Positions 7,461-34,407 of a stretch of 64,000 nt of DNA are shown here, piece by piece. The position numbers and the translations under genes were made by a program. This DNA is from Ophelia neglecta. Taxonomy: Eukaryota. Every line of letters begins with the position of its first letter. Position 1 is the first letter of the stretch. The stretch lies in the NCBI GenBank assembly GCA_965285935.1, contig OZ260661.1:104904001-104968000 (forward strand), written 5' to 3'. Below the pieces are notes generated by a model. It searched no databases. It saw nothing but the letters and a program-made list of their open reading frames with translations, and was not told the DNA's origin.

Positions 7461-8885
7461 TTCCTTTTATTTTTGTCTGAAACTGATAAAACCTGAGCAA
7501 TTCTGTGATTGATTGTTGAATACACGCTTAGAGAAAATGGCATAATTTGTTTTTCCTGTTCCGTTTGACTACAACGACTACCTGTCTACTGTTTCGCCTC
7601 ACACCTCTTTCGCCAAATTACAGTTTGCCATGGAGTTCGGTCGCCCCATAAGACTGTTCGTCCAGTTCGTATGAACGAATATCACTACCATTCTTATACA
7701 TCAAATGTGCCTTACATAGGCCTATCCAGATCGAAACCGGATCAAACGACAAGCGCGTAACATCTTCACAGTGTGTAGCCTATATGTAATATGCAATTAT
7801 GGAGGGCGTTAATGAAATATCAAGCACACCATCCTAGGGCCCGGGCGGGGAGGCCGGGTAGGGGGTGGGGAGGTTGTGTCTGTGGCCAAACAATTTAAAT
7901 ATTTCCATGTATTTAGAACTACACTCGAAACTCTGAATGGGGATGCTGGACGTAGACGAATGATAAAAAAAACATACTTTATTCAATTCTAGGCGACAGG
8001 CTCAAAGCATCAGAAAACTTCTAACCAAAAAGAAATTGGTCTCGAAAGTCGAATATAATTACATCCCAAACGACTTCTCTATTATGTTCTCCGGCTGTGA
8101 TAAATACTATATCGGTCAAACAACCACTAGTCTAAGAAACAGCTTTACATGCAGAATGCGTCAAAGACCTTCAAACTAAATATAATATGTTTGTTATAAT
8201 TTTACATGCCATTGCAATTTGTTTTTTTTCACTGATTGTAATTTGCAGAATTGTTGCGAGTCTGGAAACAATTCCTATGCCGACAGAAAAAGCTGTAATA
8301 AATAAAGAAACGTACATGGCCTATCCCAATCAATTTATATGCCTGAGGATCTTTTTGCTTCCCAGTAGGCACAACACGTGGAATACCCACGAATATCATG
8401 TGTTGTAAGTTGTAACCACGTGTACAGAACATGGAAATTTTGTTGAAAAAACAGCTTCCAAAAACATGATTGTTACAAGTGAAAACACGTAATTTCCACG
8501 AATCTTTCACGATTTTTCCGCCAAATACATTGAAGCAATGCAAGAAGACCTTGACCGACGTTCAGCATTCAAGGCAGTCGGGTTTCATGGATGGACTTTG
8601 CCATTTGCCAGTGGCTTATCTCTGAAGTACCAATAGCGGGGTTGAAATAGTGCAAAAACGATTATGACTTTCTCCCGACAGTGGGAAGGCAAATAATATA
8701 TTTGCAAAGCTAATATAATATAGCCCGCAATGCCCGCACCGGTAGTACCTGCACCCCCAATCCCGCGCAATGGCAAGCGCGCATTCATAGTCGACATTGA
8801 ACCAGGGCTCGATCTGGGACCATTTCGTGTACTTTCGACTCGCAACAATCCATCTACTATATACATTAACGCATTCAACAGGAAA
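7461..8885. promoter_or_regulatory. Putative bidirectional promoter region between YLPM1 (-) and the crotonase gene (+)
   Basis: Divergent start codons lie ~1.3-1.4 kb apart. CpG is locally enriched, with a GC-rich GGGCGGGG box near 7843. Transcription starts cannot be determined from sequence. Confidence 0.45.
8075..8150 (+). mobile_element. Penelope-like GIY-YIG endonuclease relic
   Basis: Translates FSIMFSGCDKYYIGQTTTSLRNSF, matching the YxIxCxxCxxxYIGQTxxxLxxRF pattern of Penelope GIY-YIG domains. No long ORF. Confidence 0.6.
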
Positions 8886-9164
8886 ATGCTGTCTTTAACA
8901 AGATATAATGGCAGACCTGTTGTCAATATGTTAAAGAAAGCGACCAGCATTCGCTTGCAAAATGGAATTTGCAGCTCAGCCGGTACGGAAAGTACAACGG
9001 ACAAGGTGAAACCGGAAAATTTCAGGAGCGTTCAGTACCATGTTTCAGAAAAGGTTGCCCACATAACATTAAACAGACCACATCGAATGAATGCCATTGA
9101 TGTTCACATGCCGCTGGAATTGGAAGGAGCGGTTGAAATGGCTAATTTGGACCCAGATGTCAAG
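8886..9164 (+). CDS. Crotonase/enoyl-CoA hydratase-family protein, shared exon 1 with an N-terminal mitochondrial-presequence-like leader
   Basis: AAAATG at 8886 (an upstream in-frame ATG at 8730 is possible). A basic, acid-free leader MLSLTRYNGRPVVNMLKKATSIRL precedes the crotonase motif VAHITLNRPHRMNAID. Phase-0 donor AAG|GTAAAC at 9164/9165. Confidence 0.85.
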
Positions 9165-9194
9165 GTAAACACAAGGCCTCCATATACCGTACCA

Positions 9195-9433
9195 TACGGA
9201 TATTGATTACCAGCGGACGTGCGGACGCGGATGCCATGTGTATTTTAGGGTGGCAGGAAGCAAAAAAAAAAAAAAAAGCGTCAGCAAGGCTATGATTAGG
9301 ACTGAGGATTAATTTCATGGTTAGGGGAAGGGTTAGGGACAAGTTTTATAGGTCTAGTGATCTGTTCTAATATCGGGATTTACCTCAGCAAGACTCCGTC
9401 CGCGCCTAGCTCCGCTTTTAATCAAAAGTCCCG
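9195..9433. mobile_element. Small MITE-like element containing TTAGGG-like motifs, in crotonase intron 1
   Basis: Imperfect inverted ends GGATATTGATTACCAGCGGA / TCCGCTTTTAATCAAAAGTCC, flanked by CCGTACCA at 9187-9194 and 9434-9441. Internal GGTTAGGG motifs. Confidence 0.5.
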
Positions 9434-10924
9434 CCGTACCACCATCCTAGTTATACTCATCATTGAAACCCTTGGCATAGTTAAAAAGTTATACTTTAAA
9501 TTTGAAAAATGTTTTATCTAGGGTATGACTCATTGGCAATATCGTCATAACCCGCCCATTTGTTTGGGAGATCTGATCCAGATAAAAAAGATGCTGGATA
9601 AGGCCCAGAAGTAGGCTAAAGTACAGTCACCCCAGAAGGCATTTTTGTGGGCTCCTGGTGACGATTCATTTGAAGCACAGTGAGCCCAAAACGTACAACT
9701 TTAACACCTGCATGGGGATGATTCATTTGTTAAGTTGCAATCGACTCTCTAGATTCGCAGATCTGCACTGGAAACAAAGTGTAAATACAAATGACATTGG
9801 TCCGCAACTCTACAGTAAAGTAGACCAAAGTACACTTGACCAAAGGCACATGCAAGGCGTAATATGTTGAAATCTAGCCAGTAGTTTTGGTGAACTACTA
9901 CTGAAATAAAGTATGGATGAAGAATAAATAATTCTATACAATTTTGCCCCAATAGTGGGCCAAAGTACAGTAAGCCCAAAGGCATTTCTTTGACCTTAAG
10001 TCTTCAATCATATGTTATCTGGTTTCAATCCTCCTAATAGTCTTGGATATCTACTTAAGAATAAAAGTTTAACGGCTAAAAATTAGGTCCACAAATGTGT
10101 CATGACTGCAGGTTGTCAGGAATAGGCCTAGACCTATATTGTACCTTTACAAATGAATCAAACAACTTAACTTCAGGAATTTGGGCAGGAATATAAAACA
10201 AAGTTTGCTAAGCTAAATATTTACATGATATATAGCACTTGGCCTTTAGTTTAGTTCAGAATTGTTTAGGGATTACCAAATTTTGTAGTAAATCAAACAA
10301 AATAGGGATAGTTTTTTTTTTTACTTTGGCAATAAGGGTGATAAAATGGAGCTCATATCTTAGAAACTGCACTGTTTATGATCAAGATTACAATTAAGAT
10401 CTAACCCTGTATAGTTTGATTGCCTCTTGTCGTTTGAAAGAAGAGATAAATCAAATCTTCGTATGAAATCGATGTATCCAATCAATGACTGTGGTCTGGT
10501 TGGGATTCTTATTCAAGTTCACATGCCAATGATATAATATCTTCACTCCTAAGTGCAGCGCCATACCTGAATATGGATTGTGAGGGCATGCACTTGAGTG
10601 ATACTTCCTCGTGAATGTCTCACTCTGGTACCCACCTGGGGTCTTAATAAGGCGTGACTGGATCGGAAAGTTTTTCATCCTGTTTTGTCAATCACCGGGA
10701 AGACAATTCTCATATGTTGCCGTCAGCCATGGGTAGAAAGAAGGTGACAATTTACCTGGGTTCTCTTTCTTTATAGCTGGAGGATTTTGCCATCAAAATT
10801 CGTAAAACTCCATTGGCCAACTTTTTCCAGTGGGGGGGGGGGGGGGGGGGTGATTAGGAAGTCGAATTGACCGATGGTACTTCTTTAAGGAAAATAAAGG
10901 GAAATCATGTCGTTTTTGTTTCAG

Positions 10925-11641
10925 GTTTTATTGATGTCTGGAAAGAAGGTGTTCTGTTCTGGATATGATTTAAAAGAGTATGCTGAGAGTGATAGGGGTT
11001 CGCCTCTGAGTCAGAAGATGCCATGGGATCCATACGAAGATTTCAAATTTATGTCTAGATGTAATAAAGCATGGATGTCACTCTGGAGGAGTGATAAGCC
11101 TGTGATTTGCAAAATTAAAGGGGTAGCTATTGGTGGTGGAAGTGATATGGCCCTTTGTTCAGACGTCATTTTTGCCGACGAGGAAGCAAAAATAGGGTAT
11201 CCTCCATCTAGAGTTTGGGGATGTCCAACGACAGCTATGTGGTTTTATAGGGTTGGAATTGAAAGAGCGAAACGAATAATGTTTACTGGGGAAATAATGA
11301 CAGGAAAAAGAGCAGCAGAAATAGGACTTATAGGAGAAGCTGTTCCAAGTGATAAATTAGACGAGACTGTTCAAATGTTTATCCAGCGCATCATAAATGT
11401 GCCGACCAATCAACTATTCTTCCATAAGCAAGTAATTAATCAAGCTGTGGAACAAATGGGCTTATTCCAGACTCAAAGATTAGCAACATTCATCGATGGA
11501 ATGACCAGACATACACCCGAAGGTGTGGCATTCCAGAAGAGGGCCCAGGAAGTTGGATTTAAAAAGGCGGTTTTTGAACGAGATTCGGGAGTAGATGCTT
11601 CTTGGTCAAACATGAAAACGAATTCAAAGCCTACACTGTGA
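10925..11641 (+). CDS. Crotonase-family terminal exon copy A (C-terminus ...NSKPTL, no PTS1)
   Basis: Phase-0 acceptor TTTCAG|GTT joins exon 1 (DPDVK|VLLMSG). Motifs FCSGYDL, KPVICKIKGVAIGGG and IGYPPSRVWG. The frame is open to TGA at 11641. Confidence 0.88.
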   Translation, partial: VLLMSGKKVFCSGYDLKEYAESDRGSPLSQKMPWDPYEDFKFMSRCNKAWMSLWRSDKPVICKIKGVAIGGGSDMALCSDVIFADEEAKIGYPPSRVWGCPTTAMWFYRVGIERAKRIMFTGEIMTGKRAAEIGLIGEAVPSDKLDETVQMFIQRIINVPTNQLFFHKQVINQAVEQMGLFQTQRLATFIDGMTRHTPEGVAFQKRAQEVGFKKAVFERDSGVDASWSNMKTNSKPTL

Positions 11642-13191
11642 TGTATATTGATGTTGTATAAGATCATTAAAGTTAATAATGTCATGGTCATTTAAATAAT
11701 ATTGAGTCCAAACATTATTGCCGACATTTACGACTTCTATAACCATCTGTTCTGTTTCATATAAATTATAACTATAAACTTATAGACCAATGAGCATTTT
11801 TCTTTGATTTTCTTTTGTTTCGATTTCCAGCCACCCAACGTAACCCAAATTAAATCCTTTATTGCCCACATATCTTTCGCCAGACCATTGAGATAAAAAA
11901 CGAATTGATCAGCTGGTATGATATTCAAGTGCCAAATTAAATGATATTTTTCTCAAAGGTATACTAAATCCATCGATATAAATAAGCCCTTTCTAGCATG
12001 ATGCTCCCCGACGTAACCCTCTTTATGGATATTATGTGAAGAAAGTATATGTTAAAAACTTTTATCGGTGGAAATGGAACGACTTACTAGCTTCCTTTAC
12101 TGTGTTGTGAACTAACAAGCTTCATTAAAAGTGCTGTTGACTTACAGGCATACTTAACTGTGTTGTTTGATGGGTAATAGATGCGGATAACGGGGTCCAA
12201 ACGTATTAAGTTACTTTGATCTATTCCACTCCTCCTTGGGTTACGAGAAATATGTATCCTCTTCATGCTACTGCAACATCGTATGTTGCCCGAGTTCAGT
12301 CACAATGAAAGCGTGGCTAGTCCACTTTACCCTTTAACATTTCAAAGCACTGTTGCCCTCTAGAATCCATTGAATATTTACACCCCTCTTTGGTTATACA
12401 TTTATCAAGATAAACTTTCATATTCTCATATTATTGGAGAGCTTGGTCCAACAAAGACTCTCCTAGGGCACTTTACACCTTCTTCCTACAAAATGTTGTC
12501 CAACATAGACTCCCCTGAAACATATTTTGACTTTGTGTTACATTGACCACAGACTAGTTTGTTTTGTGCGGTGCCTCCGTAATTAAAGCCATTGTCTACT
12601 TATCATTGCAGGTGATACCATTATTAATCTTAAAGTTGATTTCGTTACAAGCTTATTACGGTTAGGGTACTGAGGACTCACGTTTTTGGCCTACATGAAC
12701 GATTCGTAATGATGACGGGTCGTTTTAAGTTATTCTATTTATCAATGATATATTGTTCTGTTCGCCGGGTATCCGTCTCTGTTTTTTAAAGTCATCCCAT
12801 TTAAGTATCTTTCAAAAACCCATTCCTTGGGAATAATGACCAAAAAAGCAATCGCAGTTTAATATTCTAATTCGCACATTATATGGGTTTTATTCAGGTA
12901 AAATGCAAATAGTAATAGTAATGCCACTCGTTTGCATTCGAAATAGGCAGGGAGGGAATATCTAACTTCAAAGACGTCACTTGAACCATACAAATACATC
13001 TATAACGATCAGATAACAACAATGTTGAACTTGCTTGGCTCTTACTCGATATACTCAATACATGTGAATACAATATCATGCAATATTTTGTTGCGTGGAA
13101 TGGTGCTACTGGTTGCCTGAACCAGTTATATATTAGTAGCATTAATTATTTATTCGACATGTATTCAATGTGACAAACATTGTCATTTCAG

Positions 13192-13902
13192 GTTATATTG
13201 TTGTCAGGGAAGAAAGTTTTTTGCTCTGGATATGACCTAAAAGATTATGCCGAAGCTGAAAGGGGAGGAATTGGAAACCAGAAGATGCCATGGGATCCAT
13301 ACGAAGATTTCAAATTTATGTCTAGGTGTAATAGAGCATGGATGTCACTCTGGAGGAGTGATAAGCCTGTGATTTGCAAAATTAAAGGGGTAGCTATTGG
13401 AGGAGGAAGTGATATGGCCCTTTGTTCAGATGTCATTTTTGCAGACGAGGAAGCAAGAATAGGGTATCCTCCTTCTAGAGTTTGGGGATGTCCAACGACA
13501 GCTATGTGGTTTTATAGGGTCGGAATGGAAAGAGCAAAACGAATAATGTTTACTGGGGAAATAATGACAGGAAAAAGAGCAGCAGAAATAGGACTTATAG
13601 GAGAAGCTGTTCCAAGTGATAAATTAGACGAGACTGTTCAAATGTTTATCCAGCGCATCATAAATGTGCCGACCAATCAACTATTCTTCCATAAGCAAGT
13701 AATTAATCAAGCAGTGGAACAAACGGGCTTATTCCAGACTCAAAGATTAGCAACATTCATCGATGGAATGACCAGACATACACCCGAAGGTGTGGCATTC
13801 CAGAAGAGGGCCCAGGAAGTTGGATTTAAAAAGGCGGTGTTTGAACGAGACACAGGCGTAGATGCTACTTGGTCAAATATTGATACAAAATCGAAACTAT
13901 AA
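13192..13902 (+). CDS. Crotonase-family terminal exon copy B (C-terminus ...TKSKL, peroxisomal PTS1)
   Basis: Phase-0 acceptor TTTCAG|GTT; paralogous to copy A; ends AAA TCG AAA CTA TAA. AATAAA at ~14018. Confidence 0.88.
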   Translation, partial: VILLSGKKVFCSGYDLKDYAEAERGGIGNQKMPWDPYEDFKFMSRCNRAWMSLWRSDKPVICKIKGVAIGGGSDMALCSDVIFADEEARIGYPPSRVWGCPTTAMWFYRVGMERAKRIMFTGEIMTGKRAAEIGLIGEAVPSDKLDETVQMFIQRIINVPTNQLFFHKQVINQAVEQTGLFQTQRLATFIDGMTRHTPEGVAFQKRAQEVGFKKAVFERDTGVDATWSNIDTKSKL

Positions 13903-15027
13903 TGGAGCTGCGCATTCTTCTGTGAACTTGATGAATACAAGTTTGATGTTTAGTTTTACATGCCAATGATACAGAACATTTTCTAGTGAATAGTTACTGA
14001 CAGTAGGGCCTATTGCCAATAAAAGAAATAACTTACGTCAAAAGGTCCTGGACCTGGAACAATCTTCTCTTTTTTATTCTGCAAAAGCTCTTCAAAAGTT
14101 TTTGAATTTGTTAAAGTGTTTTTCGGTGTTAATTTTTAATAATCAATGTTAATTGCACGTGGTTTTCTCATTGCTGGATCGACTCAAAAATTGTTGGTAC
14201 AATAAACAAAACTGGTATCTGCATACAATAAAGATACTGAGATAGTAAAATATTGATCAAATTATTATTTAGGTTAATATCAATGCATGCTTATAACTAT
14301 TTACTATTAACACTATTTCATCAAATCCCCACCATCACAATATATTATTGCGTTCACTGCGGGTATGTTTTAATCGAAGGATATCTTCATTAACTTTAAC
14401 ACTGAATCCTTTGTTATGTGTTCTCACTCGTAAAGGCGCTTATTCCCGTTTCAAGTTATATCAATTTTCATTTTTTTGTTATTAAAAGTAACTACAACCT
14501 TATTTACAGTTATGTAACACGGGATTAATGGTTGTGGGCCTGCAGCTGATAGTTTCGGATGATTTCAGACTAATTTATCGGATTAGCCTCGAATAATGAT
14601 TTATCTCAGTTTGCCGTATATTCTTTGAAACCCAAACACGACTGCCCCAATAAAGGCAGAGAAAAAAATCAATATTAACATGAAGGAATGCACAAGCTTT
14701 AGAAACACGTTTGTTTATGGTTTAAGGAATGTCTCAATATTATAATGAGGCATTTTATTCAGTTACAAACCTGTAAAACGCCAATGCAGTTTCTCAAGGT
14801 TCATAATTATTATGTAGTGAACAGAAAACATTCAATGGAACATTAAGCCTGATCCAAAATGACAAAGCTTAGCACTGTGACGGGCAATGCTGTTGTACCT
14901 ATCTGATATGAATAAGGTATTAACAACACCTGAAAGTTTCAATGACTCAACACAGAGTTCAATTCCCTATGGCTGTATATACCTGTGTTTCAATGTAATT
15001 TTAAAATAAAACAAAACACTAGATATA

Positions 15028-18900: not shown

Positions 18901-20851
18901 TTTAAGTCCCTAAACAACATTAAATTTCATTATTTTGAAACATTTTCCCTGCCAAAAGGAATATATTTTTGATTTTCATCTCATATTGTTTTGTATCAAC
19001 AAAAAACAAGATGGAAAGGAACAAAACTTTTCAAAAATTCAGATAAGTGCATGGAGGTGTTCCAACCAAAGTCTGTTATTGTTATTTAAAAAAAAACTGA
19101 AACACAGCTGACACCATTGTTCATTAGAAATCAACTGACAAATCTACTTTTCAAATGAGGGATTATGGAAATGTGAAACTAACTGTATCATTTGAAAAAT
19201 TTTGATAGAAGGAGAACAACTAAATATCAGTGGCAAGCCATATAATATGACAGGGTATGTGGGCTGCAAAACTTGAGATGTGATATGTGGCATTAAATGT
19301 TGCAAATGTTACAAATGTGTATGTGTCAAGGAACCTTATACATATAAACATATACATACAAAACAATTTGACAGGCGCATATGAAAAAGGTACTACTTTG
19401 CAGATGTCCCAGAGTATCTTAATGCCAATAGCAATTCAATGTTAGATGTAAAAATAATAGCTCTAGAAGCACAGACATTACGCATAAAATGATAAGAGAC
19501 TAGTTGTTAAAAAAATAAATACAGGTAAAAATGAACTCAATAGATAAATAATAACCTATAAGGTTGAGGATGTTTCTATGTTAAAGTGTCAATATCAGGA
19601 TAACATTTATGTAATGGCCATTATTGTTTTAACAAGTATATATATATATATGGTATGTATGATGTAATTTATATCATACAGTAACTGTCTTGTTTTATGT
19701 TTTTTACAGATAAGAATGCTTGCTGATATGAAACGAGAATTCACAAAGTCAATTGACATGGAATTAAACTGCAAACCTCTTCTTGGAGATGTTCGCTCAA
19801 AAAGGTGAGACAAGGAAAATTAAAAAGGAATGTACATGTGTGAGCAGCAAACCTATACTACTTACTAGTTAGCTCCAGGGAAGTTTGGCTACCCAGGATT
19901 TTGGTATCAAAAAGTCAATTCACCATATATGTTACTCAACCACCTGGGTGAGTGACACTCATGCTTTAGACAATCAGCCAAGAGAAATGATACAATCATA
20001 CAAGCATGGGCGGTGTTGTCTTTTGCATATTTCTGCACTGTATATATATGCTCTGTATTCATTATTAATAATTATACATTCTGCCTCTGTCAGAAAAGTG
20101 ATACTGTAAAAGGTTGACTCTCATCCTGGGATGTTTACCCTTTCTTGCATTTACTGATGCCTAAAAAGTATTTATCATGGGAGTAGGTAGATGGAATAAT
20201 CTGGTCATTGGCTGAGAGCTGAAATTGTGATCCTTATCAAGCATCATAATGATATAAATTTATGTTAAGGCAATCAATGTGCTTTTACACAATACAAAAT
20301 TGTGATATCACACATTGAAGCCACAACAAAGACCATCAGATGCAGTTATGCAGTCACACCACTGAAGTTTGCCAAAAAAAGCATATATCTGTAGCATTGT
20401 GATCTCATTTAACTCATCGTTGAAATCAAGTATATTCTTTAAATGGCTGTATTTGTACAGAAAATTAGTGGCAACAAACACAGAAATATTGTTATTGACT
20501 TTGAATAGTAAAGAACCAGTTAATTCTGGCTAACAATTAAGGTGTCAAGGGCACACTCAGTACCACTCCACATAAGAAATCCTTATGCATACCTTTGAAG
20601 ACATGGCCCTACATTCTTATGGTTTCACTTTTGAAGTTTTTCATTGATAGTAGCTCCAGGAAGCATTGTGTGCGTTTTGTTAATACTACCTAATTCTATT
20701 TTACAGGTACTCCATGCTTGTGGAAGATAACATAATTAAACATATAAGTATGGATCCAGATCACACAGGCCTGGCCTGTCTATTATGTATTCAGAGAATG
20801 AGTGCTCAGAGAATAAACCTGGACAAGAAGAAGACAGGCCAATACTCATAG
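15933..20851 (+). CDS. PRDX5: Peroxiredoxin-5-like protein (atypical 2-Cys class) with a divergent active site
   Basis: Exons 15933-15989, 16541-16675, 16903-16944, 17576-17665, 19710-19804 and 20707-20851 join in frame: ...IKVGDTLP...[23 protein letters not shown]...CVSVNDPFVMEAWG...IRMLAD...RSKRYSMLVED...DPDHTGLAC. An upstream in-frame ATG at ~15885 is possible. May be a paralogue rather than the orthologue. Confidence 0.88.
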
Positions 20852-27922: not shown

Positions 27923-29797
27923 ATGAGGTCGGTTCACCTTTTATTGCCACTTTTTTGTTTGTTATCGAGTGGCACGGATATTTTCACCATGCCAGGCGAT
28001 GAAACAAGGAACGAAGATGGCGGACCGGGTATTCTTGAGGCAATCTATAAAAGGCTTGACACCCTGGATTCATTGGCGGTCAGTGTACAGGCCGTTAACA
28101 AAACACTACAAAACCTGGATACCTCTGTGACCAAGCTGTCAAACCGAGTCAATGTTAACGAGCAGGCTTTGGCTAAACTACAGGATGACGCGGAAACATG
28201 TTCCCAGGACAGAGCCACTATTCGTAACGAACTGGAAAAATTGACCGAAAATTTTACGAATTTCCAGGAAGCTGAGGAGGTGTACAAGCTGAAACTCGAG
28301 GTCAATCGCCGTGCCCGAAACCTGGTCATCTATGGCCTGAAAAATAGTAAGATCACTCCCGACGTGGAACTCGCCAAGGATTTCCTAAAAAAGATCGGCT
28401 TCTCCCATAGAGAAATATCTGACTTCGGCCCTAGGTTCGTGAGCAGAGCAAGGGAGGAGAAGGACGGATCACCGAGCGCCCTCGTCATCTCACTCCGACT
28501 CAAAGACCACGTATTCAAGGTCTTCGAAAAGGCCAAGAATACCGACATGGCAGCTAAAGTGAGTAGGGATTTGCCATTTCCGATACGAGCCGCTCGTTCA
28601 CTTCTCCTGCCAAGAGTGTACGACCTGAAGAAGTTATATTCTGATGTTAAACTGGAGTTCCCAGCCAAATTGGAGGTTAACCGTGAGCTTTGGATAGACT
28701 TCTTTCCTGGATATGGCAGAGCTTCAGGAAACTTCGTTATGGACAGGATCAAGAAAATGGACTTCACAGAGATGGATGAAAAAATCGACGCCGCGTTAAA
28801 ACAAGCTGGGAAGGAACCCATTGAAAAGCAGAAGCGGTGGACGGATGGAAAGCCTGAAAGGAAAAGGCGTCGGTCAGATGGCGCAAGCGCAGACGCGGAA
28901 CCTCCTTCAAAACAGGTTGATAACATTGTATCATCTAACATTCCATGTCAAGCCCCATCCGATGAATGTCAAACAATGTCACTACACATAAATAATGTAA
29001 ATGATAGTGCAAACCTCAAAATAGCTGAACCCCAATATGGGCGTAGATGTAAATCTCCATTTGCCTCGAAACCTATAACTCATACAAGTAGTTTTGAACA
29101 TTTCAATCGTTTCTCTTGTCTTGAGCATGAAACTGTAAACCAGGATGAGTTGGGAAAAATAGAAATGAGTGTTGACCCAGATGTAAACTGCCCTAACAAA
29201 CTAAATCTGTCTGATGGTATCCAGAGTGGTAACAAAAAGCCGGTACATTCAACCCCTCATCAAAGTAGAACAAAACCGAAAATTAGCCTTGATGTTTCGG
29301 CAATTTGCCTAGATGGCAGGGATAATAGTGTAAACATACCTGTTGATGATTGTTCCGTGCGCTTAACCGGTCCACCCCCTTTCAAAGTATATGGTGAAAC
29401 GGTAGATGATTCGGTATCAGGCAATAGTACTTTTGACTCCATCTTAAATGAATCGACCAACAACACCGTGATTGAATGTCAAATGCGTTCCCCTGTACCT
29501 AAGAAGCAAAATTCTACCAATGCAAGAAATGCAGTACATCAGCGGAAAATGCTTGAAAATAAAGCAGCGAAAGGTGTTGAGAGACATTATCAAAAACCTA
29601 GCCAACGAAAAAGTGGTCGGGGAGGTAAAACGGTTTTCTCTAAGGGCAGATGTCCAGTACAAAAGCCTTTGAATCCAGCGGAATTTAGGTCGAAAGTCGG
29701 TCGAAGAGCCGAACGAAACCTAAATAGTAAACAAGTTTTGGTACCCCCTTTAGAAGTAAACACTCCAGGGGGGGAACAGCAGGGGACTAGTGAATAG
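27923..29797 (+). CDS. LINE ORF1 protein (coiled coil + RRM-like domain + long disordered tail)
   Basis: 624-aa ORF; the likely start is ACCATG at 27989. A heptad-like region precedes RARNLVIYGL and VSRDLPFPIRAARSLL, as in L1/CR1-type ORF1p. Confidence 0.85.
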   Translation: MRSVHLLLPLFCLLSSGTDIFTMPGDETRNEDGGPGILEAIYKRLDTLDSLAVSVQAVNKTLQNLDTSVTKLSNRVNVNEQALAKLQDDAETCSQDRATIRNELEKLTENFTNFQEAEEVYKLKLEVNRRARNLVIYGLKNSKITPDVELAKDFLKKIGFSHREISDFGPRFVSRAREEKDGSPSALVISLRLKDHVFKVFEKAKNTDMAAKVSRDLPFPIRAARSLLLPRVYDLKKLYSDVKLEFPAKLEVNRELWIDFFPGYGRASGNFVMDRIKKMDFTEMDEKIDAALKQAGKEPIEKQKRWTDGKPERKRRRSDGASADAEPPSKQVDNIVSSNIPCQAPSDECQTMSLHINNVNDSANLKIAEPQYGRRCKSPFASKPITHTSSFEHFNRFSCLEHETVNQDELGKIEMSVDPDVNCPNKLNLSDGIQSGNKKPVHSTPHQSRTKPKISLDVSAICLDGRDNSVNIPVDDCSVRLTGPPPFKVYGETVDDSVSGNSTFDSILNESTNNTVIECQMRSPVPKKQNSTNARNAVHQRKMLENKAAKGVERHYQKPSQRKSGRGGKTVFSKGRCPVQKPLNPAEFRSKVGRRAERNLNSKQVLVPPLEVNTPGGEQQGTSE

Positions 29798-32700
29798 CAA
29801 TCATCGAACCAGGTCGTCACACCATGTCTTACTAATCTTAATGTTACATCATGGAATGTAGGGGGTAGACAAAATCTTTTTGAAGATTCTGATTTTCTCC
29901 AGGAGATAAACAAATCACATATCGTAGCACTTCAAGAGACGTGGGGTGGTGTAAATAAGATCCAGGAATTGCCTGGCTATAAAGCGTTCATTGCTAATAG
30001 GTCAGACCTTCACCCACGTGCGACACGTCCATCGGGGGGCTTGGCTACATATGTGAGTGACGACTTGGAAAGGTGTGTAAGAGAAATCAAAACAATAAAA
30101 GATAACTTCCAATGGCTGGAATTTGATTTTGTACAAATAGGTGAAAACGGCAAGAGGGACATTTGGTTGGTATGTAATTGCTATATCCCACCTGAGAATA
30201 GCATCGGCAAAGATGCTAGGATTGACTTGTTTGAGTCGCTCCTAGGCGATATCATAGAGTTTGAAACGTTGTATGCAGTGCGCAACGTCCACTACATGAT
30301 CCTGGGGGACAATAACTGCAGAATAGGCGGCAGACCTGATTATGTTGTTGATGATTCAAATAAGCATATCCCTGACATAATTGAGTATACATCAGATATA
30401 CAATGGCCCAGGAAATGTCTCGACAAAGGTACCCCTACAGGCGCTCTGTTACAGGAATTCTGTATAACGACAGGTATGAGAGTGTTAAATGGTCGGATTG
30501 GTGGAGACGCGCAAACTGGGACATTTACTTTCTATGGCGGTACTGGCAGGTCAACAGTCGATTATGTCATAATGTTAGAGGGCGACTTGGACAAGGTGGC
30601 CGAGTTTGACATAGGTAAACATTGTCACGTGTCTGATCACTGCCCAATACATACTAGCCTAAACATCAAGGTCTTAAAGCCTGACCCCAGTGAACCACTC
30701 AGCGATTGGAAGTTGAAGTGGGATGGCGCGCTGGTTGATGATATAGTCGCATCAGTAGCCAGTAGGACCGATATGTTCATGTCCATTCTGTCTGATAACC
30801 AGCTAAGCGTAGACACCAAAGTTGACAACATAACTGAATTATTACAAAACATTTGCAAGCCTCTAATCGGCAGGCAGCATACATTTGGCCCTTTTCGTAA
30901 ACGGTCTAAACAATTTTTCTGGGAAGATGACAATTGCTTCCGTAAAAGAGCCCGTTACTTCAAGTGGCGTGACAAGTATGACACAGCAGTGATAAACAAT
31001 GATCCAGCTGCCGAAGAAATTTACACTATTTGTAGGCAGTATAGGAAAGAATTTAGATCGGCTGAGAAGAAATGCCGATATCTAAACAGACTAAAGACGA
31101 CACGTAAAATACTGTCACTGAAAGAAAAAGACTTAAGGAAGTATTGGCGTAGTGTCAACAACATAGGGAGGGTACAATCAAATGACTGTAGGGTCCCCGT
31201 CGGAGATCTGTCTGAACAATTCTCCTCAGTGAATAACCCGACGGACCGTGACTTTTTCACCAGTAGTGCTAGAACCAACGATTACCTGCACAGTGGTGTT
31301 ATCGATCAGACCCTTTATCCTGAACTCGAAAGACCGATCACACTGAGTGAGCTTGAGAAATTTCTCAAAAGTGTGAAATGTGGTAAAGCAACTGGGTGTG
31401 ACAAGCTGCCCAATGAGCTCTTCAAGTTCATTGAACCACTCAAACCAGTCATGGTCGAAGTTTTCAACCTTGTTTTGGACTCAGGTGAATTTCCGCGCTC
31501 ATGGGCTTTGGGAGAAATTAGAGCTATCCACAAAAAAGGTAGCAAATCTGACCCCAAAAATGATCGTCCCATAACCCTGCTGAGCTGCCTTAGTAAAGTA
31601 TTTACTGGTAATTTGAATAGGAGGGTTAATGACAGGGCAGAGGAAAACTTTGTTTTTCATGCAGGTCAGGCGGGCTTCAGAAAAAACCACGGTACCATGG
31701 ATAACCTGTTTGTCCTAAAGGCATTTGGTGAGAGATATAGGCTAAGAAAGAAACAAATGTTCACAGTAATGGTTGACTTTCGGAGGGCCTTTGACCAAGT
31801 AGTTCATAACAATGCTTGGGAGAAATTGGTTCGTTTGGGCATCCGTGGCAAAGTCGTGAAGATCATGATGAACATGTACACGCATGTCAAATCATATGTC
31901 CGTGATGGGTTAGGCACTACAGGTCCGCTCTTTGGAGCATATGTTGGCTTGAGACAGGGAGAGTCCCTTTCCCCAGTAATATTTGCTTTCCTCATAAACG
32001 ACATGGAAAATTTTCTCAGAAATAATCTTCATGAAAACTGTGGTGCCACATGGGATGTCCTGAACATTCTTGCTCTCCTATTCGCAGATGACTGCTGTCT
32101 AGTCTCTGATAATGCCTCTGATTTACAGGATCTCTTAGACTTACTTGGCGAATACTGTAAGACATTGGGTCTTGAGGTAAATAAAGAGAAGACTAAGGTA
32201 TTGATATTTTGCAACAAAAAAGATGATCGTGACTTTAGTTTCTACTTCAACGGACAGAAGCTTGAGGTTGTAGATGAATTCTCTTATCTGGGTCAAACTC
32301 TTACAACAAATGCGACTTGGCAGAGAGCTAAAGAAGTCAACTTGAACAAAGCTCGTAAGTCACTGTATTTACTCCAGAAAAAGATTCACTATCTGAAACT
32401 CCCATTTGCCGATGCTCTGGACCTATTTATGAAATGTGTTGTCCCTGTATTAACCTATGGGTCAGAGTTGTGGGGTGGTGAGACATGTGACGAACTAGAT
32501 AGGTTTACCTTGAGCTTTTGTGAAAAGGCAATTCAGACTTAAACAATGTACTCCCAGCGACTGGATTTACCTTGAAACGGGCATGCCTCCCCTAGAATGC
32601 ATCCGGCATTGTAGAGTAATAGGTTTTTGGGCGTCGCTCATTGACCCTCTCTCTCAGAACAAATTGGCTTCACTCACGTATAGACAAATGAGAAAATCAG

Positions 32701-33323
32701 AAACAAACCTATGGTGTAGGGGGGTTGAAAGGATCCTGACAAAACATGGTTTTGCTTGGGCTTGGAGTAGCGAAAATATCGGTAACAAACAATGGTTTAT
32801 AAATGTCTTCAAAGACATTTGTTACTTAGATGCATTTACTAAATGCTATGAAAACTGTGTTAACTCCAAAAAAGGTATATTGTACTCTGATTTAGCCTGC
32901 AATATTAACTACACCGAAGGTGCACAGTATCTGCACATGCTGACTCCAGGTCACTGTAGTGAATTGGCGAGGTTTAGACTCAGAAACGTGTACACGGCAA
33001 ATGAGACTAGCCAATGGAAAAAGAGTCTGACGTGGGATGGTGCGAACTGTGAATGTTGTGGTTGTATGGACGATGAAAAACATTTTATACTAGGCTGTAA
33101 GCAGTTCGACCACCTCCGTAACCAATATATAGACCCGTATTACACAGAGGGCTCACCCGACCAGAAGGTCGTCGAACTACTGTGTTCTACTGACATTAAT
33201 GTTCTAAATAAGCTGGTTCTTTTCCTGAAAAAAGCCATGGCCGTCAAGAGGGAAACATTCAAGTGTATTCAATCAATGTACGAAATTAAAAATCACGACA
33301 TTGCTAAGACATTTATATCATAA
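29798..33323 (+). CDS. LINE ORF2 (AP endonuclease, reverse transcriptase, C-terminal Cys/His motif), with one frameshift near 32522
   Basis: The frame is open from 29798 directly after the ORF1 stop. APE motifs SWNVGG, LQETW, YIPP, GDNN, STVDY, SDHCP; RT motifs QAGFRK, DFRRAFD, RQGESLSP, FADD, YLG. After a one-base shift it continues KRQFRLK...CECCGCMDDEKHFILGC. Confidence 0.9.
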
Positions 33324-33747
33324 GCCTATGTATTGTACACGCCTATATGTACTTAGCCGTAATGTTTACAGTGTATTTATTTTTGTTATCTTACAGCTAC
33401 GATGATTGTGACAACCCTGGTCCATGTAATGTACAGATATGATGTCTAGATTGCTTAAATATGTAACTGTTCCCGTCTTAAATATGCGACATATGCTCAC
33501 ACGTTCTGTGATCAGATCTGGTTTGTACTTTGGTTATTATTCGCCACCACCTGATGGTTGTATTGTACATAGTTTTGTTCTCTACTTGAGTGTCAAATTG
33601 AACTAGTAACCGAACCTATTTAATTTGTTTACTTAAATCCAAGCAAGTTTAACAATATAAATAATTGGTGTAATAATCTAGGTTGAAACTGTAGCTTGTC
33701 TGAGAGCCTGTTTGGAAAAAACTGAATTAGTTGGTCCAAATAAAAGC

Positions 33748-33777
33748 CATTGTCATTGTCATTGTCATTGTCATTGT
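33748..33777 (+). repeat. (CATTGT)5 microsatellite tail of the LINE
   Basis: Five exact copies just after AATAAA. Confidence 0.9.
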
Positions 33778-34407
33778 AGTAATGAAGAATCACCACGAGG
33801 ATATCGCTATGTTAGGCCTACTGACAAATGTGATTTTTGATTCAACATATTCATGAATATGTTTTAAGATCGACATCAGGGAACAATGACGCATACCTCG
33901 AGTTATAAAACACTCGCACTGTCGCGCACTGTTAAAAAGAATGGGAGTGGATTCCAGGCAACCAATGAAAATCATAAATCATAAATAGTCAATTCATTCG
34001 GTCGGAATTCGTCACCCAGCAGCTGCAGGCCCACAAATAGTAGTCCCCGTTTCCTTTCCGACTGTAAATAAAGAAATTAATAATGTAATAATGTTCACTT
34101 AATTGAAATGACAGTCCATGATAAGTTACGAAATCGGTCAGGTTACATTTCAACGGACCAAAGTATTTGTTCGTAATGCTGAATGTGGCTTATTGTCTTT
34201 TGAATGTCAGACATGCCACTCCCTCCCCTCAAGAATTCGAGCCCAACATTCATAAAATTATATCGCGAGAGGATATATCTGATTTTATAGGCAAGTACGC
34301 AGTTTCTCTACTTGTTTGAAGCATAGACATAAATATGACTAAAACAAATCCATATACACTCCTATGCAAAAGTCAAATGGTTAAGTAATATTGCCTTTTA
34401 TTTACAG

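What the first reader, a model, noticed from the sequence alone, without database searches (positions are those of the whole stretch)
8886..13902. One crotonase gene with two duplicated last exons: a possible splice switch adding a peroxisomal -SKL signal
Seen: one exon 1 (phase-0 donor) is followed by two intact ~715-nt exons, each with a TTTCAG|GTT acceptor and its own stop. Copy A ends NSKPTL and copy B ends TKSKL. No second exon-1 homologue (ITLNRP motif) is visible between 11641 and 13191. Established: C-terminal SKL is the canonical PTS1, favoured by upstream basic residues, and the exon-1 leader has mitochondrial-presequence composition. Inference: mutually exclusive terminal exons covering most of the enzyme give mitochondrial versus peroxisomal (or dual-targeted) isoforms, i.e. 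dual targeting by duplication of a whole catalytic exon.
Basis: partly seen in the sequence, partly recalled or inferred. Interest (0 to 1): 0.8.

Follow-up and report, generated by a model that had tools for sequence, protein, structure and literature searches.

The report
Crotonase gene with two last exons
An invertebrate enoyl-CoA-hydratase-like gene has one first exon but two old, intact, selectively maintained copies of its large last exon; one copy keeps the family's ancestral peroxisomal -SKL tail and the other has lost it, so the gene probably makes two differently targeted enzyme forms, though no transcript data could be checked.

Summary
The anatomy is real. Exon 1 (8886-9164, phase-0 GT donor) is the only exon-1 homologue in all 64 kb. 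It is followed by two same-strand copies of a ~238-codon last exon, A (10925-11641) and B (13192-13902). Similarity starts exactly at a shared TTTCAG|GTT acceptor and stops at the stop codons.

The protein is a PRK08272-type crotonase. The duplication is old. Third-codon positions at both exon ends are about 50% different, as much as between species, and the flanks do not align. The central 570 nt are 97.5% identical, which points to gene conversion. The unconverted ends and the centre both show purifying selection (omega ~0.1), and a model with one copy neutral is rejected.

Copy B keeps -SKL. Copy A lost it through a two-codon insertion (SK-PT-L) and is the more derived copy.

The best reading is alternative 3' terminal exons sharing exon 1: leader-only (A) versus leader plus PTS1 (B). 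Splicing, polyadenylation and localisation are inferred, not shown. The kind is known, both as duplicated 3' coding exons and as splice-dependent PTS1, so this would be a new variant.

The parts
8886..9164 (+). Exon 1: 93 codons. It encodes a ~40-residue basic leader plus the first strand and helix region of the crotonase domain (AHITLNRP...), and ends in a phase-0 GT donor at 9165.
   Evidence: PRK08272 profile positions 5-59. It is the only exon-1 homologue in the window. The MLS start is conserved in L001 and L003.
9165..10924 (+). Intron from exon 1 to copy A (1760 nt). It contains an A16 run and a G22 run.
   Evidence: It shares no repeats with the rest of the window.
10925..11641 (+). 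Terminal exon copy A: 238 codons plus TGA, ending NSKPTL with no PTS1. This is the more derived copy.
   Evidence: 293 bits to NF006128. It has the longer branch in the tree, and in the 5' end 36 homologues are closer to B, 5 are closer to A and 10 tie.
11630..11635 (+). Two extra codons (Pro-Thr) in copy A, between the Lys and Leu codons of what is -SKL in copy B and in the relatives. They destroy the PTS1.
   Evidence: Alignments, and C-termini of homologues. That this is an insertion in A is an inference from the outgroups.
11012..11581 (+). Copy A side of the gene-conversion tract: 14 differences over the 558 aligned central positions, against ~30% and 23% divergence at the two exon ends.
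   Evidence: D1; heterogeneity chi-square 104, p 3e-23.
11666..11671 (+). ATTAAA hexamer 25 nt after the stop codon of copy A. It is a candidate poly(A) signal.
   Evidence: This is a motif match only.
11642..13191 (+). Spacer between the copies, which would be intronic for a B transcript. It has no exon-1 homologue, and only 10-27-codon ATG ORFs that end in weak in-phase GT sites.
   Evidence: The match at 11862-11887 is at chance level.
13192..13902 (+). Terminal exon copy B: 236 codons plus TAA, ending TKSKL. The SKL codons are 13891-13899. This is the ancestral-type copy.
   Evidence: 295 bits. It is closer to the outgroups than A.
13279..13848 (+). Copy B side of the gene-conversion tract.
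14018..14023 (+). AATAAA hexamer 116 nt after the stop codon of copy B. It is a candidate poly(A) signal.
   Evidence: This is a motif match only.

Best explanation
This is one transcription unit of a PRK08272-type crotonase (an enoyl-CoA hydratase/isomerase superfamily enzyme, substrate unknown) with two alternative 3' terminal exons that arose by an old tandem duplication of the large last exon. Exon 1 supplies the basic N-terminal leader and the first strand and helix region of the fold. It is spliced either to copy A, followed by cleavage and polyadenylation shortly after A, or, when A is skipped, to copy B.

The ancestral protein, still seen in single-copy relatives, carries both a mitochondrial-type leader and a C-terminal PTS1 (-SKL). 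Isoform B keeps both signals. Isoform A lost the PTS1 through a two-codon insertion and carries the leader only. Recurrent gene conversion keeps the catalytic core of the two exons nearly identical, while the two ends stay different, including a loop after the FCSGYDL motif and the C-terminal signal.

Shown: the anatomy, family membership, age of the duplication, the conversion tract, purifying selection on both copies, the ancestral status of -SKL, and absence of the duplication in the sampled relatives.

Inferred: use of both junctions, the poly(A) sites, and the organelle destinations.
For: - There is a single exon 1 in 64 kb.
- Both copies keep the same acceptor context and phase and a full open reading frame.
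- Third-position divergence between A and B is 15/30 at the 5' end and 11/20 at the 3' end, equal to between-species values of 0.5-0.85. In the centre it is 11/186.
- First plus second positions differ at only 12/60 and 3/40 sites at the two ends (Fisher p 0.0065 and 1e-4). A model in which one copy drifted neutrally predicts at least 30% and is rejected (p 4e-4).
- Nei-Gojobori omega is about 0.1 in all three segments.
- Since the last conversion, the centre shows 10 synonymous against 4 replacement codon changes. Full neutrality has p 2e-4, and one neutral copy has p 0.008.
- The FCSGYDL oxyanion-hole stretch has six silent differences and no replacement.
- Any exon-1 relic in the spacer has decayed to chance level. 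B has therefore lacked its own recognisable exon 1 for about as long as silent sites took to saturate, yet it stayed constrained.
- -SKL is ancestral: 35 of 53 animal-like hits end in SKL and 37 of 53 fit [SAC][KRH][LM]. The syntenic single-copy loci L001 and L003 end in SKL and start with basic MLS... leaders.
- A poly(A)-type hexamer follows each copy.
- Duplicated 3' coding exons used through alternative poly(A) are a documented class (PMC8373072). Splice-dependent presence of PTS1 is also documented (PMC3798809).
Against: - There is no transcript, junction or poly(A) evidence. The species is not in the searched collections.
- The unconverted ends total only 53 codons, so the selection tests rest on small counts.
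- Gene conversion could keep the centre of an unused copy intact.
- The arrangement was not found in the relatives examined. L001 and L003 have DNA. For the P0004 and P0011 loci only gene lists are available. There is therefore no cross-species conservation of the two-exon layout.
- Copy A lies first and has the better polypyrimidine tract, so B might be used rarely.
- Copy B has Thr at a Met that is conserved in nearly all homologues seen.
- No targeting predictor was run. Mitochondrial import of the leader is judged from composition only.
Confidence: 0.6

Rival explanations
1. Only one copy is expressed, most simply exon 1 plus A. The other is an orphaned partial gene copy. It would have become non-functional recently, for example after a clean deletion of its own exon 1 and promoter, and it looks intact because gene conversion refreshes its centre.
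For: No second exon 1 is present. A conversion tract covers 78% of the exon. Copy B carries Met-to-Thr at a conserved site. No relative shows the layout.
Against: The non-converted ends of both copies show omega ~0.1 despite saturated silent divergence. The one-copy-neutral model is rejected at the ends (p 4e-4) and in the centre (p 0.008). B, the copy without an exon 1 directly upstream of it, is the more conservative copy and keeps the ancestral SKL. Only a very recent loss of function would escape these tests.
Confidence: 0.2
2. Copy B is a separate gene with its own promoter and a short, non-homologous first exon in the spacer or in A's 3' region. It would give an N-terminally different or truncated protein that has a PTS1 and no leader.
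For: Leader-less isoforms are annotated in relatives: Ptychodera X3 and X4, and Patiria X2. The spacer holds a few ATG ORFs with in-phase GT sites.
Against: Those ORFs are only 10-27 codons long with poor donors and no homology. Such a protein would lack the segment matching profile positions 5-59 of the crotonase domain, which by general knowledge of the fold includes core strands. No exon-1-like sequence occurs anywhere in 64 kb.
Confidence: 0.12
3. The second copy is an assembly or haplotype artefact.
For: The central 570 nt are 97.5% identical.
Against: The exon ends differ by 23-30%. The introns and 3' flanks are unalignable. The C-termini differ by an indel. The window has no N. Haplotype duplicates would also be similar in their flanks.
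Confidence: 0.03

Closest known systems
Tandemly duplicated 3' coding exons used through alternative polyadenylation (homologous C-terminal substitutions, e.g. GNAO1, FBLN1; PMC8373072)
   Same: Homologous terminal coding exons lie in tandem. Each has its own stop, and both would be joined to the same upstream exon. The isoforms would be identical except for a homologous region.
   Different: Here the duplicated exon encodes about 72% of the protein, nearly the whole catalytic domain. A conversion tract homogenises its core. The main difference is a targeting signal. Usage is not demonstrated, and the layout was not found in the related species sampled.
Splice-dependent presence or absence of PTS1 (pumpkin hydroxypyruvate reductase, Yarrowia malate dehydrogenase, Ustilago GAPDH, Aspergillus PGK; review PMC3798809)
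   Same: One gene would give isoforms with and without a C-terminal PTS1.
   Different: The known cases change a few C-terminal residues through alternative splice sites or small exons, and the partner compartment is the cytosol. Here a whole duplicated catalytic exon would be swapped, and the other signal is an N-terminal leader.
Proteins with competing N-terminal mitochondrial and C-terminal PTS1 signals (e.g. HMG-CoA lyase; PMC3798809)
   Same: The single-copy relatives and isoform B combine a basic leader with -SKL.
   Different: The window's lineage adds a second form without the PTS1. This would separate part of the pool from the competition between signals.
Strict mutually exclusive internal exons from tandem exon duplication (Dscam, tropomyosin; also the Ptychodera flava orthologue, locus L002)
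   Same: The origin is exon duplication, and only one of two homologous exons is included.
   Different: A and B are terminal exons with stop codons. Exclusivity would come from the choice of splice acceptor and poly(A) site, not from internal exon pairing or steric rules.

Membership tests
Crotonase / enoyl-CoA hydratase-isomerase superfamily (Pfam PF00378), NCBIfam subfamily NF006128 (PRK08272) | Profile match above the curated cut-off. | tested here: met
   PF00378 gives 95.6 and 99.1 bits against a cut-off of 27 for exons 2A and 2B. NF006128 gives 293 and 295 bits against a cut-off of 257 for exon 2 alone. Exon 1 continues the same profile at positions 5-59. The nearest solved structure is 3njb, E 7e-55.
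Crotonase / enoyl-CoA hydratase-isomerase superfamily | Catalytic activity and substrate. | not testable with these tools
   The subfamily has no assigned substrate in the libraries used. The conserved FCSGYDL and GGGSD motifs are present in both copies. The catalytic residues were not mapped.
PTS1-bearing peroxisomal matrix proteins | C-terminal tripeptide matching [SAC][KRH][LM]. | tested here: met
   Copy B ends in SKL. Copy A ends in PTL and does not meet the rule.
PTS1-bearing peroxisomal matrix proteins | The signal is conserved among orthologues. | tested here: met
   37 of 53 animal-like homologues fit the motif and 35 are exactly SKL. They span molluscs, annelids, echinoderms, hemichordates and amphioxus.
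PTS1-bearing peroxisomal matrix proteins | PEX5-dependent import into peroxisomes. | not testable with these tools
   This needs localisation or binding experiments.
Mitochondrial presequence proteins | N-terminal basic, hydroxylated, acid-poor leader ahead of the mature domain. | tested here: inconclusive
   The first 38 residues hold 5 K/R, 1 D/E and 10 S/T, with a peak helical hydrophobic moment of 0.72. Similar leaders occur in L001 and L003. No dedicated predictor was available, and import was not tested.
Alternative 3' terminal exons from tandem exon duplication | Two homologous exons in tandem on one strand, in the same phase, each with its own stop codon, downstream of a single shared exon. 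| tested here: met
Alternative 3' terminal exons from tandem exon duplication | Both splice junctions and both poly(A) sites observed in transcripts. | not testable with these tools
   No transcript data are available for this species. Only ATTAAA and AATAAA hexamers were found after the stops.
Alternative 3' terminal exons from tandem exon duplication | Both copies maintained by selection. | tested here: met
   Omega is ~0.1 in the converted and unconverted parts, and the one-copy-neutral models are rejected. The counts are small.
Alternative 3' terminal exons from tandem exon duplication | The arrangement is conserved in related species. | tested here: not met
   L001 and L003 have one exon 1 and one exon 2 within +-10 kb. 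The gene lists for the P0004 and P0011 loci show one ECH exon-2 ORF.
Strict mutually exclusive internal exons | Both alternative exons are internal and flanked by constitutive exons. | tested here: not met
   Both copies end in stop codons, and no downstream coding exon of this gene exists.

The most novel reading that the evidence does not exclude
An ancestral enzyme carrying two competing targeting signals (a mitochondrial-type leader and a PTS1) was split into two isoforms without duplicating the whole gene. Only its 238-codon catalytic last exon was duplicated, or only that exon survived. The copies are used as alternative terminal exons. Gene conversion keeps their catalytic cores identical, while selection shields the ends from conversion, including the destroyed PTS1 in one copy.
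Probability: 0.4. Interest if true: 0.6.

Novelty: new variant of a known kind. Interest (0 to 1): 0.45.

Why it matters
If both junctions are used, this is a compact natural example of how dual organelle targeting can be partitioned at the exon level. It would show subfunctionalisation of a targeting signal by duplication of a terminal exon that holds most of the enzyme. The mosaic of converted core and protected ends would mark where the functional difference lies.

It also corrects the direction of the story: the peroxisomal signal is old and widespread in this little-studied animal crotonase family, and what is new is a form without it. For annotation, it warns that the second copy should not be called a pseudogene or a separate truncated gene by default.

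Tried and rejected
- **Second exon 1.** tblastn with word size 2, local DNA alignment with window controls and a profile HMM on all six frames find only a 26-nt 81% match at 11862-11887 (reading IAHISFARPLR then a stop). Its score lies inside the control distribution, so it is not accepted as a relic. Some controls overlapped exon 1 itself; this inflated the control maxima but does not change the conclusion.
- **Short repeats linking exon 1, intron 1 and the spacer** (D3 and I5). They have mixed orientation, with 11-nt exact cores at most, and are treated as chance.
- **RNA pairing between intron 1 and the spacer that could loop out copy A.** The first script timed out. The rerun gave -508 kcal/mol, weaker than the mean of -532 for 23 other window pieces. 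The method is crude, and no signal was seen.
- **Interspersed repeats in intron 1 or the spacer shared with the rest of the window.** None at E 1e-4.
- **Alternative first exons in the spacer.** Only 10-27-codon ORFs.
- **Locus look-ups.** P0019, P0033 and P0044 were not on record. The P0004 and P0011 loci came back without DNA.
- **Haplotype or assembly artefact.** Rejected on the divergence pattern.
- Under the operators' rule, the joined exon 1 plus exon 2A and exon 1 plus exon 2B protein models were not built, searched or folded, and all searches were exon by exon by reference. The large representative-protein search, structure prediction and fold search were not used because the family scans and the word search settled the family. 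The species was not identified. The tree places the gene next to the L001 organism and near Capitella-type sequences, which is only a weak hint of an annelid or another lophotrochozoan.
Full report
**Observation**

- An ATG at 8886 opens 93 codons that end at 9164, followed by GTAAAC, a phase-0 donor.
- Two long exons follow on the same strand. Copy A is 10925-11641: 238 codons plus TGA, ending NSKPTL. Copy B is 13192-13902: 236 codons plus TAA, ending TKSKL.
- Both are preceded by TTTCAG and begin GTT.
- In a DNA alignment with 200 nt of flank on each side, similarity starts at the acceptor and ends at the stop codon. Upstream and downstream sequences do not align.
- The window has no N.

**Family**

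- Pfam ECH_1 matches both copies, at 95.6 and 99.1 bits against a cut-off of 27.
- NCBIfam NF006128 (PRK08272, a crotonase subfamily) matches exon 1 at profile positions 5-59 and each exon 2 at positions 60-298. Exon 2 alone scores 293-295 bits against a cut-off of 257. The exon 1 to exon 2 junction is therefore seamless in the domain.
- The nearest solved structure is a mycobacterial enoyl-CoA hydratase, 3njb (E 7e-55). No substrate is assigned to the subfamily.
- Everything was done exon by exon, by reference.

**One exon 1 only**

- tblastn of exon 1 against the whole window finds only itself; the next hit has E=2.
- A profile HMM of the exon-1-equivalent region from 88 homologues, run against all six-frame fragments of the 64 kb, hits only 8724-9203 (E 1e-24). 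The next hit has E=1.3.
- The best spacer candidate is 11862-11887: 21 of 26 nt identical to the AHITLNRP-coding part, followed by a stop. It scores 27, against a control mean of 22.6 and a control maximum of 34. It stays at chance level under other scoring schemes and in the profile search. I do not accept it as a relic.
- The spacer offers only 10-27-codon ATG ORFs with weak in-phase GT sites.

**Age of the duplication and gene conversion**

- Divergence is strongly mosaic. There are 27 differences in the first 90 aligned nt, 14 in the central 558, and 14 in the last 60 (chi-square 104, p 3e-23).
- Third-codon positions differ at 15/30 (5' end), 11/186 (centre) and 11/20 (3' end). The end values equal those between the window and two other species (0.50-0.85).
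- So the duplication is old. Silent sites are saturated, which also explains why the flanks do not align. The central ~570 nt (11012-11581 in A, 13279-13848 in B) were homogenised much later by gene conversion.

**Selection**

- Nei-Gojobori estimates give dN/dS of 0.205/2.08 (5' end), 0.009/0.084 (centre) and 0.13/1.09 (3' end). Omega is about 0.1 throughout.
- At the unconverted ends, first plus second codon positions differ at 12/60 and 3/40 sites, against 15/30 and 11/20 at third positions (Fisher p 0.0065 and 1e-4).
- If one copy had drifted neutrally for its half of the divergence, at least ~30% of first and second positions should differ. The observed value is 15/100 (p 4e-4).
- In the centre there are 10 synonymous and 4 replacement codon changes since the last conversion. 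Full neutrality has p 2e-4, and one neutral copy has p 0.008.
- The stretch around FCSGYDL has six silent differences and no replacement.
- These counts are small, but they agree: both copies have been translated and constrained for most of their history. Only a very recent loss of function in one copy would escape detection.

**Which copy is ancestral**

- A word search with copy B returned homologues from chiton, annelids, brachiopod, priapulid, springtail, echinoderms, hemichordates and amphioxus at 59-82% identity, then bacterial proteins at ~58-61%.
- Nothing above 82% was found, so the window's species is not in that collection.
- Of the 53 best, animal-like hits, 35 end in SKL and 37 fit [SAC][KRH][LM]. 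Most exceptions are near-variants (PKL, SKI) or clearly different tails.
- The best hit's locus (L001) is syntenic with the window on both sides. It holds one exon 1, a 297-nt intron at the same position, and one exon 2 ending DSKL.
- A second species (L003) has the same two-exon, single-copy layout ending KSKL.
- Gene lists for two further loci also show a single exon-2 ORF.
- The exon 1 of both relatives begins MLS... with a basic, acid-poor leader like the window's.
- The ancestral state is therefore a leader plus -SKL on one polypeptide. Copy B keeps that state.
- Copy A has two extra codons (Pro-Thr, 11630-11635) between the Lys and Leu of the former SKL. It has replaced a conserved Gly in the loop before QKMPWDPY. 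It has the longer branch in the tree. In the 5' end, 5 homologues are closer to A, 36 are closer to B and 10 tie.
- The distance from B's stop to the next syntenic block (~2.6 kb) matches that in L001 (~2.7 kb). This is a weak hint that B sits in the original position.

**Mechanism proposed**

- Copy B has no exon 1 of its own, and none has been recognisable for about as long as silent sites took to saturate. Yet B remained constrained in the parts that conversion does not reach.
- The simplest account is that exon 1 is shared. It would splice to A with polyadenylation soon after (ATTAAA at 11666), or skip A and splice to B (AATAAA at 14018).
- This corresponds to the documented class of tandemly duplicated 3' coding exons used through alternative poly(A) (PMC8373072).
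- The predicted outcome is one form with the leader only (A) and one with the leader plus PTS1 (B). This would partly separate the pools of a protein whose single-copy relatives carry competing signals. Competing signals and splice-dependent PTS1 are both reviewed in PMC3798809.
- That conversion stops short of both ends fits selection against erasing the differences there. This step is inference.
- The mitochondrial nature of the leader rests on composition only: 5 K/R, 1 D/E and 10 S/T in 38 residues.

**Rivals**

- **A recently orphaned or silent copy kept intact by conversion (confidence 0.2).** It is disfavoured by the selection tests and by B being the conservative copy.
- **A separate B gene with a short non-homologous first exon (0.12).** It lacks any supporting ORF and would drop part of the fold. 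However, leader-less isoforms are annotated in other phyla.
- **An assembly or haplotype artefact (0.03).** It is excluded by 23-30% divergence at the exon ends and unalignable flanks.

**Novelty and verdict**

- The components are known kinds. The combination would be a new variant: a terminal exon encoding ~72% of a crotonase, duplicated, partly homogenised by conversion, and differing in a PTS1.
The splice-switch idea is strengthened indirectly but remains unproven.
- The direction of change is corrected: a signal was lost in A, not added in B.

**Side observation that bears on plausibility**

- In Ptychodera flava (locus L002) the orthologous multi-exon gene has two homologous internal exons only 52 nt apart (19189-19342 and 19395-19555).
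- NCBI isoforms X1 and X2 differ exactly there, and X3 and X4 lack the leader.
- Exon duplication with alternative use, and alternative N-termini, thus recur in this family. Those isoforms are database predictions that I could not verify.

Noticed in passing
L002:19189-19555 (Ptychodera flava, GCA_041260155.1 CM083798.1): The hemichordate orthologue has two homologous internal exons (19189-19342 and 19395-19555) separated by only 52 nt. NCBI isoforms X1 and X2 (P0124 and P0033) differ exactly in that segment, and X3 and X4 lack the N-terminal leader. This looks like mutually exclusive use of a tandemly duplicated exon in the same gene family.
   Followed up: partly
L002:18561-24340 and 29102-33783; proteins P0033, P0044, P0050: The tandem Ptychodera paralogues share an identical block of about 60 residues (from MLFTGDLIDG to QKQVINQA) while differing by 30-40% elsewhere. 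This suggests gene conversion between crotonase copies there too.
   Followed up: no
window:16511-16948 (+): An ORF fragment has a weak Redoxin hit (E 9e-4) and a peroxiredoxin-5-like motif (recognised from memory). It lies in a block syntenic with L001 13418-14842. In mammals PRDX5 is itself dually targeted to mitochondria and peroxisomes (own knowledge).
   Followed up: no
window:27923-33323 (+): A LINE-like retrotransposon, with a 624-codon ORF1 followed by an 857-codon ORF that has a reverse-transcriptase domain (PF00078, E 1e-30).
   Followed up: no
window:1952-3523 (-): A 523-codon ORF rich in RGG and proline repeats. It has no Pfam hit and lies in a block syntenic with L001 5558-8476.
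   Followed up: no
window:35908-36330 (+): An exon-like ORF matching the start of the sodium:solute symporter family (PF00474, E 5e-6).
   Followed up: no
window:8730-8885 (+): An in-frame upstream ATG at 8730 would add 52 residues ahead of the MLS start. The extension is not conserved in L001 or L003, where the ORFs also begin MLS. The true start needs 5'-end data.
   Followed up: partly
window:9262-9277 and 10833-10854: Intron 1 contains an A16 run and a G22 run. The G run lies 70 nt upstream of copy A's acceptor.
   Followed up: no
proteins P0053-P0120: The animal members of this crotonase subfamily are 58-61% identical to bacterial proteins (Chloroflexota, Desulfobacterales and others). 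That is unusually close for an animal-bacterium pair. In a quick tree the animal sequences form one clade.
   Followed up: partly
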